64,000 bases of DNA, from positions 248,001 through 312,000 of the IMG/VR virus record IMGVR_UViG_3300023174_000036; one strand, 5' to 3'. The position numbers and the translations under genes were made by a program. Below are positions 22,261 through 28,339 of this stretch, piece by piece (position 1 is the first letter of the stretch; each line of letters begins with the position of its first letter). Below the pieces are notes generated by a model. The model was not told the origin of the DNA, did not search any database, and was given only the letters and a program-made list of their open reading frames with translations.

Positions 22261-22351
22261 TTATTAGAATACATTTAAGCCTTTTTCATCACGCTGATGG
22301 TGGCCGGTCCTTGCTACTCAAACTATGTTCAAGCTAAATGTACTTTAATAA
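22261..22351 (-). ncRNA. Stem-capped small RNA A (UUUGAGUAG-CAAGGACCGGCCA motif)
   Basis: Long terminal stem; motif shared with element B at 24274-24406. Confidence 0.5.
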
Positions 22352-22352
22352 A

Positions 22353-22554
22353 GTGTCCGGCTACTCACACCACATGAGCCCCGGACTGAGCGGTTACTCT
22401 GTCCACGTTCTTTTCCATTTAGACGGGCAACGTCCCTGCCTTTGTGATTTCTCAAGTCGTTCCTAAAGAGAACCTTGCGGTAGATCCAACGCACCGTACA
22501 GTTATCGTTACTGTAATGACGCACTTTATTAACGTAAAAGTGTAATCCGGGGTC
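22353..22554 (-). ncRNA. Unassigned ~200-nt multibranch structured RNA
   Basis: Closing stem GACCCCGGAT/GTCCGGGGCTC and several internal hairpins; no ORF. Confidence 0.5.
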
Positions 22555-22558
22555 TTTT

Positions 22559-22634
22559 TGGTGCCGCCTCCCGGGATCGAACTGGGCACCTACTGATTAC
22601 AAGTCAGTTGCTCTACCAAATGAGCTAAGGCGGC
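22559..22634 (-). tRNA. tRNA-Thr(TGT)
   Basis: Cloverleaf, CCA. Confidence 0.95.
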
Positions 22635-22650
22635 AAGCTATTACTTATTT

Positions 22651-22884
22651 TTAAGTAGTACTAGTACTAGCAGTTCCGGTATCGTTAGTTTGATATCCAG
22701 TAGGGCCGTTTCCACGTAGTGCATTTTTATCACGTGTAGGAGTTTTGATAACAATTTCACTACATAACTGAGCATCAATCATCATTCGCTTGTATTGATT
22801 TCGTTGATCAGCAGTTGCGCCTTTCATCAATCCAATCATGCGTTTTGTTGTTTTACTCAGTTTAAATGTCTTGTTTGGTTTCAT
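22651..22884 (-). CDS. Hypothetical protein
   Basis: ORF with AAGG SD between tRNA genes. Confidence 0.65.
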   Translation of the reverse strand: MKPNKTFKLSKTTKRMIGLMKGATADQRNQYKRMMIDAQLCSEIVIKTPTRDKNALRGNGPTGYQTNDTGTASTSTT

Positions 22885-22903
22885 GTTTTACCTTTTAGTT
22901 ATT

Positions 22904-22993
22904 TGGCGGAACGAAAGAGACTCGAACTCTTAAACCGACTTTCGCCGATCGACGGATTAGCAATCCGCTCCAATACCATTATGGGACCGTTCC
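22904..22993 (-). tRNA. tRNA-Ser(GCT)
   Basis: Long variable arm, G73, CCA. Confidence 0.95.
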
Positions 22994-23019
22994 TTGTTCT
23001 TTTACTTATTACTAATACT

Positions 23020-23104
23020 TGGTGCGAGTGGCCGGAATCGAACCGGCACGACCGAAGCCGAGAGATTTTAAGTCTCTTGTGTCTACCTATTTCACCACAC
23101 TCGC
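23020..23104 (-). tRNA. tRNA-Leu(TAA)
   Basis: Long variable arm, CCA. Confidence 0.95.
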
Positions 23105-23108
23105 AATT

Positions 23109-23339
23109 TTAAACTCGTTCTCGCTTTGTTCTGCCAATGCGGCTAGCTTTGTTCCAATTGTAAACAGCACCATCCGGGCATTTACCATTTGCAACAGTGT
23201 CTACACCAAATCGTCCCACTACTTCAAAATCTGGACCTTTAATAGTTACAAATACCCCAACGGCCTTGGCGTATGCCATTGCTTCGTTTAAGGTTATAAA
23301 TCTTTCTAATTCTCTGTCATTACATATAACTTTGTACAT
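23109..23339 (-). CDS. Hypothetical protein (MYKVICNDRE...)
   Basis: ATG just downstream of the 23346-23374 promoter; the longer ORF-track start lies inside tRNA-Trp. Confidence 0.65.
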   Translation of the reverse strand: MYKVICNDRELERFITLNEAMAYAKAVGVFVTIKGPDFEVVGRFGVDTVANGKCPDGAVYNWNKASRIGRTKRERV

Positions 23340-23345
23340 GTTGTT

Positions 23346-23374
23346 ATTATACTCTCTTCTGGTGCTGTTGTCAA
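23346..23374 (-). promoter_or_regulatory. Consensus sigma70 promoter TTGACA-N17-TATAAT
   Basis: Perfect consensus. Confidence 0.85.
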
Positions 23375-23387
23375 CACTTATTTTATA

Positions 23388-23461
23388 TGGCGTACCCTCA
23401 GGGACTCGAACCCCGACCGACAGTTTTGGAGACTGTAATGCTGCCATTACACTAAGGATAC
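23388..23461 (-). tRNA. tRNA-Trp(CCA)
   Basis: Loop CT-CCA-AA, G73, CCA. Confidence 0.95.
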
Positions 23462-24004
23462 ATATTCTTTAAAAATTTCTTCTGCTTGGTTCCAACACAA
23501 TGGTTTGTTATCTTTTATTAATGGAAAAGAAAAACAATACCTTTCAGAATCAACTGCTGATATATTGTGTAACATACCAACATTGACTAAACTTGGTTGT
23601 CCTACTTGGGCCGAATATACTAGCTCGCAATCCTCTTCCTCTGCTAGTATATAATCAGTTCCTGTTGGAGTTTTTAGACATTTTAATTTACTTGGATCTT
23701 TACAAACAAACCAATTCATTTTTGATGGTGTATTGCAATACACAAAATTAATTTTTACATGATTGTCAAAATCTTCATCGTCCAAATGAATTGGTAGTTT
23801 ATTGTATTCGCCCTCATTGGCTGGATTTGATTTTAAATGAAATAGCTCTGCTTTACCAATTTCTATTTGTAGTGATGACAACCAGTCTATCAATTCTTTA
23901 TTGATTAAACTTTTATCGTACATCGATATTACCGGAGCGTTTTCCAGAAAAACTGGCATAAATTTAACCGGAATATTTAAGTTATGATGGAATGTATTTT
24001 TCAT
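23447..24004 (-). CDS. Hypothetical protein, possible 2OG/cupin fold
   Basis: IHLD...HNI...RY pattern. Confidence 0.5.
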   Translation of the reverse strand: MKNTFHHNLNIPVKFMPVFLENAPVISMYDKSLINKELIDWLSSLQIEIGKAELFHLKSNPANEGEYNKLPIHLDDEDFDNHVKINFVYCNTPSKMNWFVCKDPSKLKCLKTPTGTDYILAEEEDCELVYSAQVGQPSLVNVGMLHNISAVDSERYCFSFPLIKDNKPLCWNQAEEIFKEYVSLV

Positions 24005-24017
24005 ACGTTATTTATTA

Positions 24018-24107
24018 TGGCGGAAGCGGTGAGATTCGAACTCACGGTGCCTTTCGACACGACAGTTTTCAAGACTGTTGCAATAAGCCGGACTCTGCCA
24101 CGCTTCC
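24018..24107 (-). tRNA. tRNA-Ser(TGA)
   Basis: Long variable arm, CCA. Confidence 0.95.
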
Positions 24108-26556: not shown

Positions 26557-26560
26557 ATAT

Positions 26561-26636
26561 TGGTCCACTCAGTCGGATTCGAACCGACACCTCATTGATT
26601 AAGAGTCAAGTGCGCTACCATTAACGCTACAAGTGG
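26561..26636 (-). tRNA. tRNA-Lys(CTT)
   Basis: Loop CT-CTT-AA, CCA. Confidence 0.95.
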
Positions 26637-26747
26637 TTGGTCGTAATTAAATTGATTTAATGTGCCAACCAGGACCAATACGGGGTCTAGATTGACACTA
26701 ACGTTTAGCACGTTTCATGTCGTTCTCCTTATGAACATTTTTAAAAA

Positions 26748-26804
26748 CAGGATGCTTATTTTTCAATTAAAAGTTGAATTTTTGAATTTGCTGTTCGCAT
26801 CCTA
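26748..26804 (-). ncRNA. Y-like ncRNA copy 3 (57 nt, ACAGCAA family; Lys(UUU)-like anticodon arm)
   Basis: TAGGATGC-GA-ACAGCAA...TTCAA-CTTTTAA-TTGAA...GCATCCTG. Confidence 0.65.
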
Positions 26805-26808
26805 AACT

Positions 26809-26883
26809 TGGTACTCCGAACGGGTTTCGATCCCGCTTCTCCAACTTGAAAGGCTGGCGTCCTAGCCACTAGACGACCGGAGT
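26809..26883 (-). tRNA. tRNA-Glu(TTC) copy 2
   Basis: Loop CT-TTC-AA, CCA; sequence divergent from copy 1. Confidence 0.9.
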
Positions 26884-26888
26884 ATATT

Positions 26889-26963
26889 TGGTAGCCAATG
26901 ATGGGAACGATCCATCGACCCTCGCCTTATCAAGACGATGCTCTACCACTGAGCTAATTGGCT
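26889..26963 (-). tRNA. tRNA-Ile(GAT)
   Basis: Cloverleaf, CCA. Confidence 0.95.
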
Positions 26964-26968
26964 ATATT

Positions 26969-27044
26969 TGGTGGAGGTGACAGGGATCGAACCTGCGACA
27001 TCTTGCTTGCAAAGCAAACGCTCTCCCAACTGAGCTACACCCCC
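26969..27044 (-). tRNA. tRNA-Ala(TGC)
   Basis: G3:U70, CCA. Confidence 0.95.
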
Positions 27045-27052
27045 ATATTATA

Positions 27053-27802
27053 TTATTTGATGGAGTTTATTTTAACTAGACCAAAAAATTTCAAAATTAA
27101 AATTATCCCATACGCCAGATCAAATTCCCACCATTTTTCTGAAAATTTAGCTTTAGTGGTATCATCATGATGGTTGGCAGCCAACTCTTCGCCGACGTAC
27201 AGCAGTCCTATAGGAAACATGTTCCGAGAACGATCAGCGCCTTTGGCTGGCCTATTTCGATATCCTATTGTGTGACTTAGATAGTTATGCGCACGAAGAT
27301 GGAACTGTGTATATACAAACAAGATAACACCAAATACCACTCCCCATATACCAAACGCAATTAAAGCCAAAATTCCTGCTATTGGATATCTATATTTAGA
27401 ATACTTTACTAATTGATGTTCTAGTTTATCAGTGTATACAGGCACATCGTTACCCCATTTTTCAATTTCCTCAGGAGTCAAATAGTACGCTGGAGTAGCT
27501 GGAGATGGCTCTTGAGTGAAAAACAAATCTATTTTACTGAAGTAAATTGGACTGTGTGGATCATCCGGTGTGTCAGAAGTAGCATGATGCTTTCTATGAC
27601 CCGCAACAAATGCACGGACAGAATCACCAGGATACCAAAAACCTATAAACCATAACCATGTTCTAGAAAAATATTCTAATCTAGTACTTACTATAGAAAC
27701 TGATCGATGGGCCAATATTCTATGAATATAAATTGCATAAACATTGCAAGTTATGAAAAAAATTGTTAGATAACACCACAACATCCACTGATAATCAAGC
27801 AT
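27053..27802 (-). CDS. Membrane fatty acid (acyl-CoA/acyl-lipid) desaturase
   Basis: His boxes HRILAH, HRKHH, NHH; DPHSP; FDL. Confidence 0.85.
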   Translation of the reverse strand: MLDYQWMLWCYLTIFFITCNVYAIYIHRILAHRSVSIVSTRLEYFSRTWLWFIGFWYPGDSVRAFVAGHRKHHATSDTPDDPHSPIYFSKIDLFFTQEPSPATPAYYLTPEEIEKWGNDVPVYTDKLEHQLVKYSKYRYPIAGILALIAFGIWGVVFGVILFVYTQFHLRAHNYLSHTIGYRNRPAKGADRSRNMFPIGLLYVGEELAANHHDDTTKAKFSEKWWEFDLAYGIILILKFFGLVKINSIK

Positions 27803-27862
27803 GTATTGCTCCTTAAATATATTGAATATTTATTGATAACTCAGTATGCTTGATTACTTGAT

Positions 27863-27938
27863 TGGCTCCACAGCCTGGGCTCGAACCAGGGACCAAATGA
27901 TTAACAGTCATCTACTCTACCAACTGAGCTACTGCGGA
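27863..27938 (-). tRNA. tRNA-Asn(GTT)
   Basis: Cloverleaf, CCA. Confidence 0.95.
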
Positions 27939-27945
27939 ATAAACT

Positions 27946-28020
27946 TGGCGGTCCCAAGGAGGATCGAACTCCTAACCTCGGCGTGACAAGCCGACATTAT
28001 AACCATTTAACTATGGGACC
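27946..28020 (-). tRNA. tRNA-Asp(GTC)
   Basis: Cloverleaf, CCA. Confidence 0.95.
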
Positions 28021-28026
28021 TAAATT

Positions 28027-28112
28027 TGGTGGAGTATCCTGGGATCGAACCAGGCGTGCCATTACGACGGCGGATTTACAGTCCACTGCATCACCATTGA
28101 TGCTTCTACTCC
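28027..28112 (-). tRNA. tRNA-Tyr(GTA)
   Basis: Long variable arm, CCA. Confidence 0.95.
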
Positions 28113-28126
28113 ATGTTTTAATTGTA

Positions 28127-28339
28127 ACACTCTCCTTTGACTATGTCAAGCACTATTTCAGGTAGTGTTGGAAAGTGTGTATTAAAGCACTCTTCATGGA
28201 TGAACCCACTTGCCTTACGGCCTGAGAATGCTTTAATACGCTACCATTTTCTTCACACAAGAGTGAATGCCATCCGGTAGGCCGCCCGTTCGCCCCATGT
28301 TTTACGTGCAGGGCAGAGTCCTCGTTACTCTGTATTCAC
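28127..28339 (-). ncRNA. Three tandem stem-capped small RNA units (G 28127-28178, E 28179-28239, F 28263-28339)
   Basis: Closing stems ACACTCTCC/GGAAAGTGT, GTATTAAAGCA/TGCTTTAATAC, GTGAAT/ATTCAC; no ORF. Confidence 0.45.

What the first reader, a model, noticed from the sequence alone, without database searches (positions are those of the whole stretch)
22261..28339. Repeated stem-capped small-RNA cassettes between tRNAs, resembling the tmRNA spacer
Seen: at least seven spacers (22261-22351, 24204-24267, 24274-24406, 26381-26481, 28127-28178, 28179-28239, 28263-28339) are closed by 8-17-bp stems. Several fit UAAA(G)CA(C/U)A(C/U)U...AGUGUG(U/C)UUUA, as does the tmRNA intervening segment (TAAACATATT...AATGTGTTTA). 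The 30-110-nt interiors differ. C contains ACTGGGATA and D its complement TATCCCAGT (9 nt, possibly chance). Inference: a common processing signal releases a set of small RNAs from the tRNA precursor.
Basis: partly seen in the sequence, partly recalled or inferred. Interest (0 to 1): 0.6.

Follow-up and report, generated by a model that had tools for sequence, protein, structure and literature searches.

The report
Stem-capped small RNA genes among phage tRNAs
The spacers between the tRNA genes of this 356-kb freshwater phage hold conserved, single-copy structured small-RNA genes, each closed by a long stem; they sit near a phage gene for a Ro60-like RNA-binding protein and may be its Y-RNA-like partners.

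Summary
Their closing stems fold better than shuffles. In related viral contigs they are kept through compensatory changes. The shared stem motif occurs in the whole 356-kb genome only at B, D and the tmRNA spacer. Spacer E holds a near-consensus sigma-70 promoter for tRNA-Tyr. Spacer G is a conserved structured RNA, but it is not closed by the proposed stem.

The interiors are not filler. Each is a single-copy module found in 3 to more than 20 other contigs, with its own covarying helices. The modules sit in different slots in different phages. The C type has a 7-bp acceptor-like stem and a T-arm, so it is tRNA-like.

X is about 245 nt with a 19-bp cap. 'A2' is about 200 nt; its 21-mer matches more than 100 viral contigs exactly, almost no cellular genome, and no Rfam family. 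A2 starts 3-5 nt after the stop codon of a DUF2828 gene in several lineages. The window's copy of that protein (14352-15764) folds like Ro60.

Best reading: these are stable small RNAs cut from tRNA precursors, plausibly Y-RNA-like partners of a phage Ro60. Processing and binding are inferred, not shown.

The parts
22259..22353 (-). Cassette A: 95-nt RNA with a capping stem of 18 pairs, a 7-8 bp hairpin with an AUA loop, an invariant single-stranded stretch (AGUAGY AAGGAC) and a short covarying helix. It ends 3 nt before tRNA-Gly(tcc).
   Evidence: Fold z -3.3. In 9 distinct sequences, 93.7% of cells are paired and 10 of 30 pairs show double changes; slid controls give 22-45%. One copy per genome by covariance model, 95-110 bits. 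No Rfam hit.
22354..22556 (-). A2 RNA: about 200 nt of conserved multi-hairpin RNA directly after the CCA end of tRNA-Thr. Its last bases start the cap of A. It contains an invariant 21-mer.
   Evidence: The 21-mer has more than 100 exact hits in viral contigs, giving 72 unique contexts, and 1 hit in 185,579 species genomes. In 40 sequences, 21 of 35 predicted pairs show double changes. No Rfam hit at E<=10. It starts 3-5 nt after a DUF2828 stop codon in L167 and L189.
24200..24270 (-). Cassette B: about 70-nt RNA with a cap of the AAACAYA/UGUGUUU type and two small interior hairpins. It lies just upstream of tRNA-Leu(tag).
   Evidence: z -2.9. In 8 distinct homologues both the cap and the interior hairpin covary.
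24272..24407 (-). Cassette C: tRNA-like RNA. An outer cap pairs the tRNA-Glu CCA end and linker with the 3' trailer. Inside are a 7-bp acceptor-like stem, a long arm, a T-arm-like hairpin and then A-CC-U.
   Evidence: z -4.4. Homologues in 21 loci. The relatives' T-stems covary around an invariant UUCGAUU loop. Neither ARAGORN nor the Rfam tRNA model calls it. RNA contigs cover 24282-24388.
25408..25654 (-). X RNA: about 245-nt multi-branched RNA closed by a 19-bp cap. It ends 8 nt before tRNA-Gly(gcc).
   Evidence: z -2.85. In 4 sequences, 22 of 73 pairs show double changes. Its exact 17-mer occurs in 17 viral contigs. No Rfam family.
26380..26481 (-). Cassette D: 102-nt RNA that fills the whole Lys(ttt)-Met spacer. 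Its 19-bp cap reaches into the CCA end of tRNA-Lys and the first bases of tRNA-Met.
   Evidence: z -3.4. In 11 distinct homologues, 8 of the 19 cap pairs show double changes and 88.7% of cells are paired, against 32-47% in slid controls. The same interior sits in other slots in L046, L138, L156 and L209.
28121..28149 (-).
   Evidence: 11 of 12 consensus positions. Both hexamers are conserved in L003.
28178..28240 (-). Hairpin F: a 15-bp perfect stem between the G element and the promoter. Together with the promoter it has a PeSL-like layout.
   Evidence: z -6.3. L003 keeps the stem around a different interior. L226 has one compensatory change.
28243..28347 (-). G element: conserved structured RNA downstream of a 58-aa ORF. 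It has three covarying local hairpins and a stretch, GGCGAACG, that fits the bacterial Ro-binding motif GNCGAAN0-1G. It is not stem-capped.
   Evidence: z -0.6 for the whole element. 8 sequences were aligned and folded.
30470..30530 (-). Intervening segment of the permuted tmRNA: a 12-bp cap with the same arms as the D-type caps. In L003 it is replaced by an unrelated 103-nt segment.
14352..15764 (-). Ro60-like gene (DUF2828 + DUF7788/vWA, 470 aa), downstream of tRNA-Val and tRNA-Cys on the same strand. It is the candidate protein partner of the RNAs.
   Evidence: phrog_850 'RNA-binding protein', E 6e-141. Pfam assignments. Model pLDDT 91.6. The top 13 PDB fold matches are all Ro60/TROVE, E 3e-8 to 8e-6. 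The MIDAS residues D-x-S-x-S are invariant.
25150..25327 (-). S1: conserved 178-nt spacer between tRNA-Gly(gcc) and tRNA-Gln, holding a 125-nt domain closed by a 9-bp stem.
   Evidence: 6 homologues were aligned.

Best explanation
The spacers hold a set of distinct, single-copy genes for structured small RNAs. They are transcribed together with the tRNAs from host-type sigma-70 promoters.

In each module the 5' leader and 3' trailer pair into a long AU-rich stem, the cap. The cap usually starts right after the CCA end of the upstream tRNA and ends 0-8 nt before the next tRNA.

Inferred mechanism:
1. RNase P cleavage at the downstream tRNA sets the module's 3' side.
2. Trimming of the upstream tRNA's trailer sets its 5' side.
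3. The base-paired ends let the module fold on its own inside the polycistronic precursor and shield it from exonucleases, so it accumulates as a stable small RNA.

The tmRNA intervening segment is one more such slot.

The modules resemble Y RNAs: a shared terminal stem, variable effector domains and, in type C, a tRNA-like domain. They are encoded with a phage Ro60-like protein. I propose that at least A2, and probably the capped modules too, bind that protein. The complex could then redirect host RNA decay or repair enzymes, as phage phiLo Ro60 does with its two Y-like RNAs and host PNPase.

Shown: the stems, their covariation, module conservation, module shuffling, single copy number, the Ro60 fold and the gene-RNA adjacency. 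Inferred: co-transcription, the processing steps and RNA stability. Hypothesis, about 0.35: binding to the Ro60-like protein.
For: - Stems are more stable than shuffles.
- Compensatory changes are seen in A, D, X, and B, F and G. G-U pairs are common on the tRNA strand.
- The paired cap motif occurs only in the tRNA/tmRNA region of the genome. The same arms enclose unrelated interiors in relatives.
- Each module is single-copy in the genome and is found in many other contigs.
- Modules occupy different slots in different phages.
- Near-consensus promoters lie on the tRNA strand only.
- Metatranscriptome contigs cover tRNAs and cassettes but not the ORFs inside the array.
- C-type modules have an acceptor-like stem and a covarying T-arm.
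- The Ro60 fold of the DUF2828 protein.
- A2 abuts that gene in 8 loci, and 33 of 102 A2 loci carry the gene within the few kb fetched.
- Published precedents: PMC12135203, PMC4201824, PMC7824862.
Against: - No RNA ends were mapped. Only assembled contigs were available, many at 90-95% identity and so from relatives.
- The Rfam Y RNA and YrlA models do not match any cassette.
- The bacterial Ro-binding motif GNCGAAN0-1G is absent from the caps. It occurs only in G, with near-matches (GNCGAC) in A2 and C.
- In the window's own phage, A2 lies 6.6 kb from the Ro60-like gene and the other modules 8.4-12.5 kb from it.
- A leader paired right up to the tRNA 5' end might hinder RNase P (abstract of PMC7897497). 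If so, an extra endonuclease such as RNase III may be needed, and the phage encodes none.
- Sense versus antisense folding energies do not separate clearly (p = 0.09).
Confidence: 0.55

Rival explanations
1. The hairpins are only processing or insulating spacers. The stem guides a double-strand-specific or structure-guided nuclease (RNase III or RNase E) that separates the tRNAs. The excised interior is degraded and has no function.
For: Caps abut tRNA ends and even pair with the CCA end. At the Lys-Met slot, at F and in the tmRNA spacer, the interior differs between relatives while the stem stays.
Against: Interiors are conserved modules with invariant stretches and their own covarying helices: A, B, D and C. 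The same interior is kept while its cap changes. RNA contigs of the modules occur where array ORFs are absent.
Confidence: 0.12
2. The caps act mainly at the DNA level. They are short shared homology arms that let phages swap modules by recombination, as PeSL motifs do in T4-type phages. Any RNA role is secondary.
For: Modules are shuffled among slots and combined differently. Arms are identical around unrelated interiors within one genome, L019. F plus the promoter in E has the stem-loop-plus-early-promoter layout of a PeSL (PMC4122927).
Against: Arms diverge by compensatory changes that preserve pairing rather than sequence, and G-U pairs are tolerated. That points to selection on RNA pairing. 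This reading does not exclude the main one; both can be true.
Confidence: 0.2
3. The cassettes are miniature inverted-repeat mobile elements that insert between tRNA genes.
For: They have terminal inverted repeats with a shared motif, and their presence at a given slot varies.
Against: Every module is single-copy in the 356-kb genome. No target-site duplication is evident. Interiors are unrelated to each other. No transposase was seen in the region.
Confidence: 0.03
4. The stems are chance inverted repeats in AT-rich DNA.
For: Perfect 9-bp inverted repeats within 300 nt are common: 540 in the genome, with 24 in the 10-kb array against 15 expected. The literal 11-mer is not enriched.
Against: The z-scores, the covariation in up to 40 sequences and the slid-partner controls.
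Confidence: 0.01

Closest known systems
Y RNAs / YrlA and the Y-RNA-like RNAs (Yrl1, Yrl2) of Thermus phage phiLo, partners of Ro60 (PMC4201824, PMC12135203)
   Same: The small RNAs have 5' and 3' ends that pair into a long stem. Several paralogues share the stem but differ inside. One module has a tRNA-like domain. The genes lie next to a Ro60-family gene, and the system occurs in phages.
   Different: The protein belongs to the divergent DUF2828 branch: no sequence hit to any solved Ro60, fold match only. No cassette matches the Rfam Y RNA or YrlA models. The GNCGAA motif is not in the caps. The RNAs are embedded in a tRNA array rather than standing beside the gene. There are at least six to eight of them rather than one to four. 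A2 has no obvious terminal stem.
[quoted passage not shown]
   Same: Non-tRNA small RNAs encoded inside a phage tRNA cluster, whose function is unknown.
   Different: Sequence relatedness was not tested here. This phage has far more modules, a shared cap, and a linked Ro60-like gene.
PeSL (promoter-early stem-loop) motifs of T4-type phages (PMC2839356, PMC4122927)
   Same: Short conserved stem-loop motifs at module borders, linked to swapping of unrelated sequences between related phages. F plus the promoter in E has the same stem-loop-plus-promoter layout.
   Different: PeSLs flank protein-coding modules and act as terminator-promoter units. Here the two arms enclose the module itself and covary as an RNA helix.
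Processing stems of bacterial rRNA operons, and GOLLD/ROOL RNAs found beside phage tRNAs
   Same: Leader-trailer pairing encloses a functional RNA within a polycistronic precursor. Large structured RNAs live in phage tRNA arrays; relative L159 carries GOLLD at 201 bits.
   Different: The modules are 65-250 nt. The window has no GOLLD or ROOL match. RNase III cleavage is untested.

Membership tests
Y RNA / YrlA | Encoded next to a Ro60 (TROVE + vWA) gene | tested here: met
   The window has a Ro60-fold gene at 14352-15764. A2 starts 3-5 nt after its stop codon in L167 and L189, and abuts it in 8 loci. In the window itself A2 lies 6.6 kb away and the other modules 8.4-12.5 kb away.
Y RNA / YrlA | 5' and 3' ends pair into a long stem that carries the Ro-binding motif (GNCGAAN0-1G in bacteria) | tested here: inconclusive
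   Long terminal stems are present in A, B, C, D and X. The motif is not in those stems. It occurs in G (GGCGAACG), and near-matches (GNCGAC) occur in A2 and C.
Y RNA / YrlA | tRNA-like domain (T-arm, acceptor-like stem) | tested here: met
   C-type modules have a 7-bp acceptor-like stem and a T-arm whose stem covaries around a UUCGAUU loop. The window's copy has a UUCAAGC loop and a weaker stem. This was not seen in A, B, D or A2.
Y RNA / YrlA | Match to the Rfam covariance models | tested here: not met
   Nothing at E<=10 on A, A2 or X, or at E<=5 on B, C and D. The one weak YrlA hit lies on tRNA-Ile/Ala.
Y RNA / YrlA | Physical binding to Ro60 | not testable with these tools
   Needs pull-down or a gel-shift assay.
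PeSL | Stem-loop followed by an early sigma-70 promoter at the border of swapped modules | tested here: met
   This holds for F plus the promoter in E only. The other caps carry no promoter.
MITE / Correia-like element | Many near-identical copies with terminal inverted repeats and target duplications | tested here: not met
   Each module has one copy in the genome.
tRNA | Cloverleaf recognised by ARAGORN or the Rfam tRNA model | tested here: not met
   No call on any cassette. The 28030-28112 element is a true tRNA-Tyr that ARAGORN missed.
T4 RNA C / RNA D | Stable RNA processed from the phage tRNA precursor | not tested
   The location criterion is met. Processing and homology were not examined.

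The most novel reading that the evidence does not exclude
A very abundant group of freshwater phages, many of them jumbo, carries a Ro60-like ribonucleoprotein system. Its RNA side is a whole repertoire of Y-like RNAs housed in the tRNA array: the phage-specific 200-nt A2 RNA, the 245-nt X RNA, a tRNA-like module and several capped small RNAs. The RNAs are matured by the tRNA-processing machinery and are exchanged between phages as cassettes. The shared cap is the protein's docking helix, and each interior tethers a different host enzyme or decoys a different host defence.
Probability: 0.3. Interest if true: 0.85.

Novelty: new variant of a known kind. Interest (0 to 1): 0.72.

Why it matters
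Phage tRNA arrays are usually read as codon-usage or anti-defence devices, and their spacers are ignored. Here the spacers hold at least eight conserved structured RNAs, none of them in Rfam.

One of them, A2, is among the most conserved non-coding sequences I saw in viral metagenomes. Its 21-nt core is identical in more than 100 contigs, and it is tied to a Ro60-family gene that itself has thousands of relatives.

If the link holds, it gives a tractable and very widespread model for three questions:
- what viral Ro60-Y RNA particles do;
- how stable RNAs are packaged into tRNA precursors;
- how RNA genes are shuffled as cassettes.

The capped design is also a natural template for expressing stable small RNAs from tRNA-flanked constructs.

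Tried and rejected
- Known RNA families: Rfam at gathering threshold and at E<=5 or E<=10 gave no family for any cassette, A2 or X. I considered hammerhead, twister, HDV-like and RNase P RNA likenesses by eye. None has a model hit.
- Close GenBank phage: none; only tRNA-sized matches.
- Literal 11-mer motif: not enriched in the window.
- Counts of perfect 9-bp inverted repeats: only mild enrichment (24 against 15), so not a useful statistic.
- Sense versus antisense folding energy of 33 cassettes: inconclusive, p = 0.09.
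- Antisense targets of the invariant loop of A in the phage genome: none beyond chance.
- Phage-encoded RNase III: none found.
- A and C as one family: rejected. The A model finds only one copy per genome. The 13-mer and 10-mer they share in the window look like a local mosaic.
- B-D loop-loop pairing through the 9-mer: not supported.
- A2 and a D-type module lying inside a tmRNA intervening segment in L209: unresolved. No acceptor piece complementary to that coding piece was found.
- Sequence search of the DUF2828 protein against PDB and NCBIfam: blank. Only the fold search linked it to Ro60.
- Long-range pairing of the A2 5' end: I could not settle it by eye.
I gave it 5,996 letters.

Full report
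**Context.** The window is bases 248001-312000 of a 356,312-bp IMG/VR virus record with 40% G+C, rated 96% complete. DNA and RNA runs that hold it come from freshwater lakes. The window carries 29 tRNA genes, two of them found only by Rfam: tRNA-Cys at 16105-16178 and tRNA-Tyr at 28030-28112. It also carries a permuted two-piece tmRNA of the betaproteobacterial type. All are on the minus strand. The ORFs between them and six near-consensus sigma-70 promoters are on that strand too. No close relative is in the GenBank phage collection.

**Checking the observation.** Folded as RNA, spacers A, B, C, D, E and F each form a domain closed by a terminal stem. Their z-scores against dinucleotide shuffles run from -2.9 to -6.3. 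G does not (z -0.6).

The tmRNA intervening segment begins one base after the CCA of the acceptor piece. It forms a 12-bp stem and ends five bases before the coding piece.

The literal consensus is not enriched. As a pair of arms 25-160 nt apart, it occurs on the RNA strand of the whole genome only at B, D and the tmRNA spacer, against 0.42 expected for both strands together. That pattern was derived from these cases. Independent support comes from relatives, where the same arms enclose at least nine unrelated interiors. In one contig (L019) two cassettes share both arms but nothing inside.

**Two corrections.** E contains TTGACA-17-TACAAT ending 8 nt upstream of tRNA-Tyr, and both hexamers are conserved in L003. 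At least its 3' half is therefore a promoter and not part of a released RNA. G's proposed closing stem is not conserved. In seven homologues its 3' arm pairs locally in a hairpin that covaries.

**Related arrays.** A 2OG-Fe(II) oxygenase gene inside the array led to L003, a 116-kb contig with a syntenic array and the same tmRNA. Motif scans then brought in more than 200 viral loci.

Covariation in the modules:
- A: across nine distinct sequences, 93.7% of cells pair and 10 of 30 pairs show changes on both sides. Slid controls give 22-45%.
- D: across eleven sequences, 8 of the 19 cap pairs show double changes, while the interior core is nearly invariant.
- B, F and S1 also covary.
- G-U pairs are frequent on this strand.

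**The interiors are genes, not filler.**
- Every module is single-copy in the genome.
- Each recurs in other contigs at 60% coverage or more: A 11 loci, B 11, C 21, D 13, F 3, G 7, X 11.
- Each has invariant stretches and its own helices.
- Modules move between slots. The D interior fills the Lys-Met slot in the window, follows tRNA-Thr in L046, follows A2 in L138, L156 and L225, and lies just upstream of a tmRNA coding piece in L209.
- A given slot can hold different modules. The Lys-Met slot holds three unrelated interiors in the window, L003 and L019. The tmRNA spacer differs between the window and L003.

**Module C is tRNA-like.** Inside the outer cap lies a 7-bp stem (GCUCUUU with AGAGAGC). 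A long arm follows. Then comes a hairpin that in many relatives is a textbook T-arm: its stem covaries (UUGG/CCAA, CGGG/CCCG, UUCG/CGAA, UCCG/CGGA) around an invariant UUCGAUU loop. After the stem comes A-CC-U. The window's copy has a UUCAAGC loop and a weaker stem. Neither ARAGORN nor the Rfam tRNA model calls it. [quoted passage not shown] M. smegmatis YrlA, with a 7-bp acceptor-like stem, is cut by RNase P and receives CCA (PMC4201824).

X (25408-25654) is closed by a 19-bp cap. In only four sequences, 22 of its 73 predicted pairs show double changes.

A2 (about 22354-22556) follows tRNA-Thr directly and runs into the cap of A. Alone it folds no better than shuffles. Its 21-nt core, however, is identical in more than 100 viral contigs, and 69 neighbourhoods are under 93% identical to each other. 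Several of its hairpins covary: 21 of 35 predicted pairs in 40 sequences. The core occurs once in 185,579 bacterial and archaeal species genomes, on a 558-bp MAG contig. No Rfam family matches A, A2 or X.

In 72 unique contexts, A2 mostly sits right after a tRNA. It is followed either by a tRNA or by one or two capped modules of types A, C, D or others. One relative (L159) also carries GOLLD in its array.

**The protein link.** The ORF at 14352-15764 lies downstream of tRNA-Val and tRNA-Cys on the same strand.
- It matches phrog_850 'RNA-binding protein'.
- It carries Pfam DUF2828 + DUF7788, with VWA_2 in some relatives.
- It has no sequence hit in PDB or NCBIfam.
- It has 6,232 cluster representatives at E<=0.001.
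- A model built from 76 sequences has pLDDT 91.6.
- Its 13 best PDB fold matches are all Ro60/TROVE proteins over the full length, among them the Ro60 of Thermus phage phiLo, Xenopus Ro and D. radiodurans Rsr. E-values run from 3e-8 to 8e-6 and TM-scores up to 0.62. Below these come vWA domains only.
- The MIDAS residues are invariant.

Among the fetched loci, 33 of the 102 with A2 also hold this gene within the few kb available. In eight loci of more distant lineages, A2 begins immediately after the gene's stop codon on the same strand. I read this directly in L167 and L189.

Ro60 proteins work with Y RNAs. These have paired ends, variable interiors and, in bacteria, a tRNA-like domain, and they are encoded beside the Ro60 gene in more than 250 bacteria and phages (PMC4201824). 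Phage phiLo Ro60 binds two adjacent phage Y-like RNAs and host PNPase (PMC12135203). TROVE proteins with a tRNA-like partner have been noted in jumbo phages (PMC7824862).

**Expression.** Only assembled contigs could be laid. In three metatranscriptomes from other studies, the bins made of array ORFs have about zero depth. tRNA bins are high. The bin with A and the 3' hairpin of A2 has depth 38, 17 and 35 in the three runs. Contigs cover C (24282-24388), part of A2, S1 and the region after tRNA-Lys. Many of these contigs are 90-95% identical, so they come from relatives. No ends, strand or levels can be read from them.

**Mechanism.** I commit to capped modules co-transcribed with the tRNAs.
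- The module's 3' side is set by RNase P acting on the next tRNA.
- Its 5' side is set by maturation of the preceding tRNA's trailer.
- The paired ends give autonomous folding and resistance to exonucleases.
- The tmRNA spacer is an equivalent slot.

The cap may also be a docking helix for the Ro60-like protein, about 0.35. It may also serve as a homology arm for cassette exchange, as PeSLs do in T4-type phages (PMC4122927). These roles are compatible with each other.

Points against:
- No Rfam Y RNA match.
- The bacterial Ro-binding motif is absent from the caps. It is present only in G, with near-matches in A2 and C.
- In this phage the modules lie 6.6-12.5 kb from the gene.
- A leader paired up to the tRNA 5' end may hinder RNase P (abstract of PMC7897497), so an extra endonuclease may be needed. 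The phage has no RNase III.

**Verdict.** The finding is real and was under-described. I rate it a new variant of a known kind: small stable RNAs of phage tRNA clusters, as in T4 RNA C and D (PMC3014915), and Y-RNA-like partners of Ro60. It is unusually rich, is arranged as cassettes, and includes a very widespread unnamed RNA.

Noticed in passing
window 22354-22556 (-); loci L137-L233: A2: a phage-specific RNA of about 200 nt whose 21-nt core is identical in more than 100 viral contigs. It matches no Rfam family, has several covarying hairpins, and often sits directly 3' of a DUF2828 (Ro60-like) gene.
   Followed up: partly
window 25408-25654 (-): X: a 245-nt multi-branched RNA with a 19-bp cap. 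It shows strong covariation in 4 sequences, occurs in 17 viral contigs and matches no Rfam family.
   Followed up: partly
window 14352-15764 (-): A Ro60-fold protein of the DUF2828 family. It has thousands of relatives in viral metagenomes, many about 90% identical.
   Followed up: yes
window 26745-26804, 15790-15838 and 15840-16006 (-); L003 9030-9100 and 10990-11060; L046 3534-3586: A repeated leader hairpin: UUUAGGAU, three variable bases and AACAGCAAAUUC, then a long AU-rich loop, then the complementary arm and GUUU. In two cases a Shine-Dalgarno site and a start codon follow (the Ro60-like gene and a 6-codon ORF). It may be a regulatory 5' element or a terminator.
   Followed up: no
window about 26700-26720 (-): A six-codon ORF (MKRAKR) with a strong Shine-Dalgarno site, conserved in L003 and followed by a stable hairpin. 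It looks like a leader peptide.
   Followed up: no
window 28030-28112 and 16105-16178 (-): tRNA-Tyr(GTA) and tRNA-Cys(GCA) are missed by ARAGORN but found by the Rfam tRNA model.
   Followed up: yes
window 30561-30956 (-): A sub-threshold match to the cspA thermoregulator (43 bits) spans a 67-aa ORF (30609-30812) just upstream of the tmRNA. This may be a phage cold-shock protein gene.
   Followed up: no
L159 7549-8012 (-): A GOLLD RNA (201 bits) lies inside the tRNA array of a relative that also carries A2, C-type, F, G and S1 homologues.
   Followed up: no
L209 8378-8690: A2 and a D-type module lie directly upstream of a tmRNA coding piece. No matching acceptor piece was found between them and the preceding tRNAs.
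   Followed up: partly
L003 9179-9268: A 90-nt spacer with a T-arm and a 7-8 bp terminal stem but an odd middle part. It may be an unusual tRNA or another tRNA-like RNA.
   Followed up: no
window 21177-21803 and 25657-26268 (-); 848-1888 and 17900-19792 (-): Two 2OG-Fe(II) oxygenase genes sit inside the tRNA array. Two radical-SAM genes lie nearby, one of the B12-binding methyltransferase type.
   Followed up: no
window 24402-24407 with 24272-24281; 26482-26486 with 26376-26380; L193 3351-3462: The 3' arm of several caps pairs with the CCA end of the upstream tRNA (CCAUAU with AUAUGG). The tRNA 3' end would then be sequestered in the precursor.
   Followed up: partly
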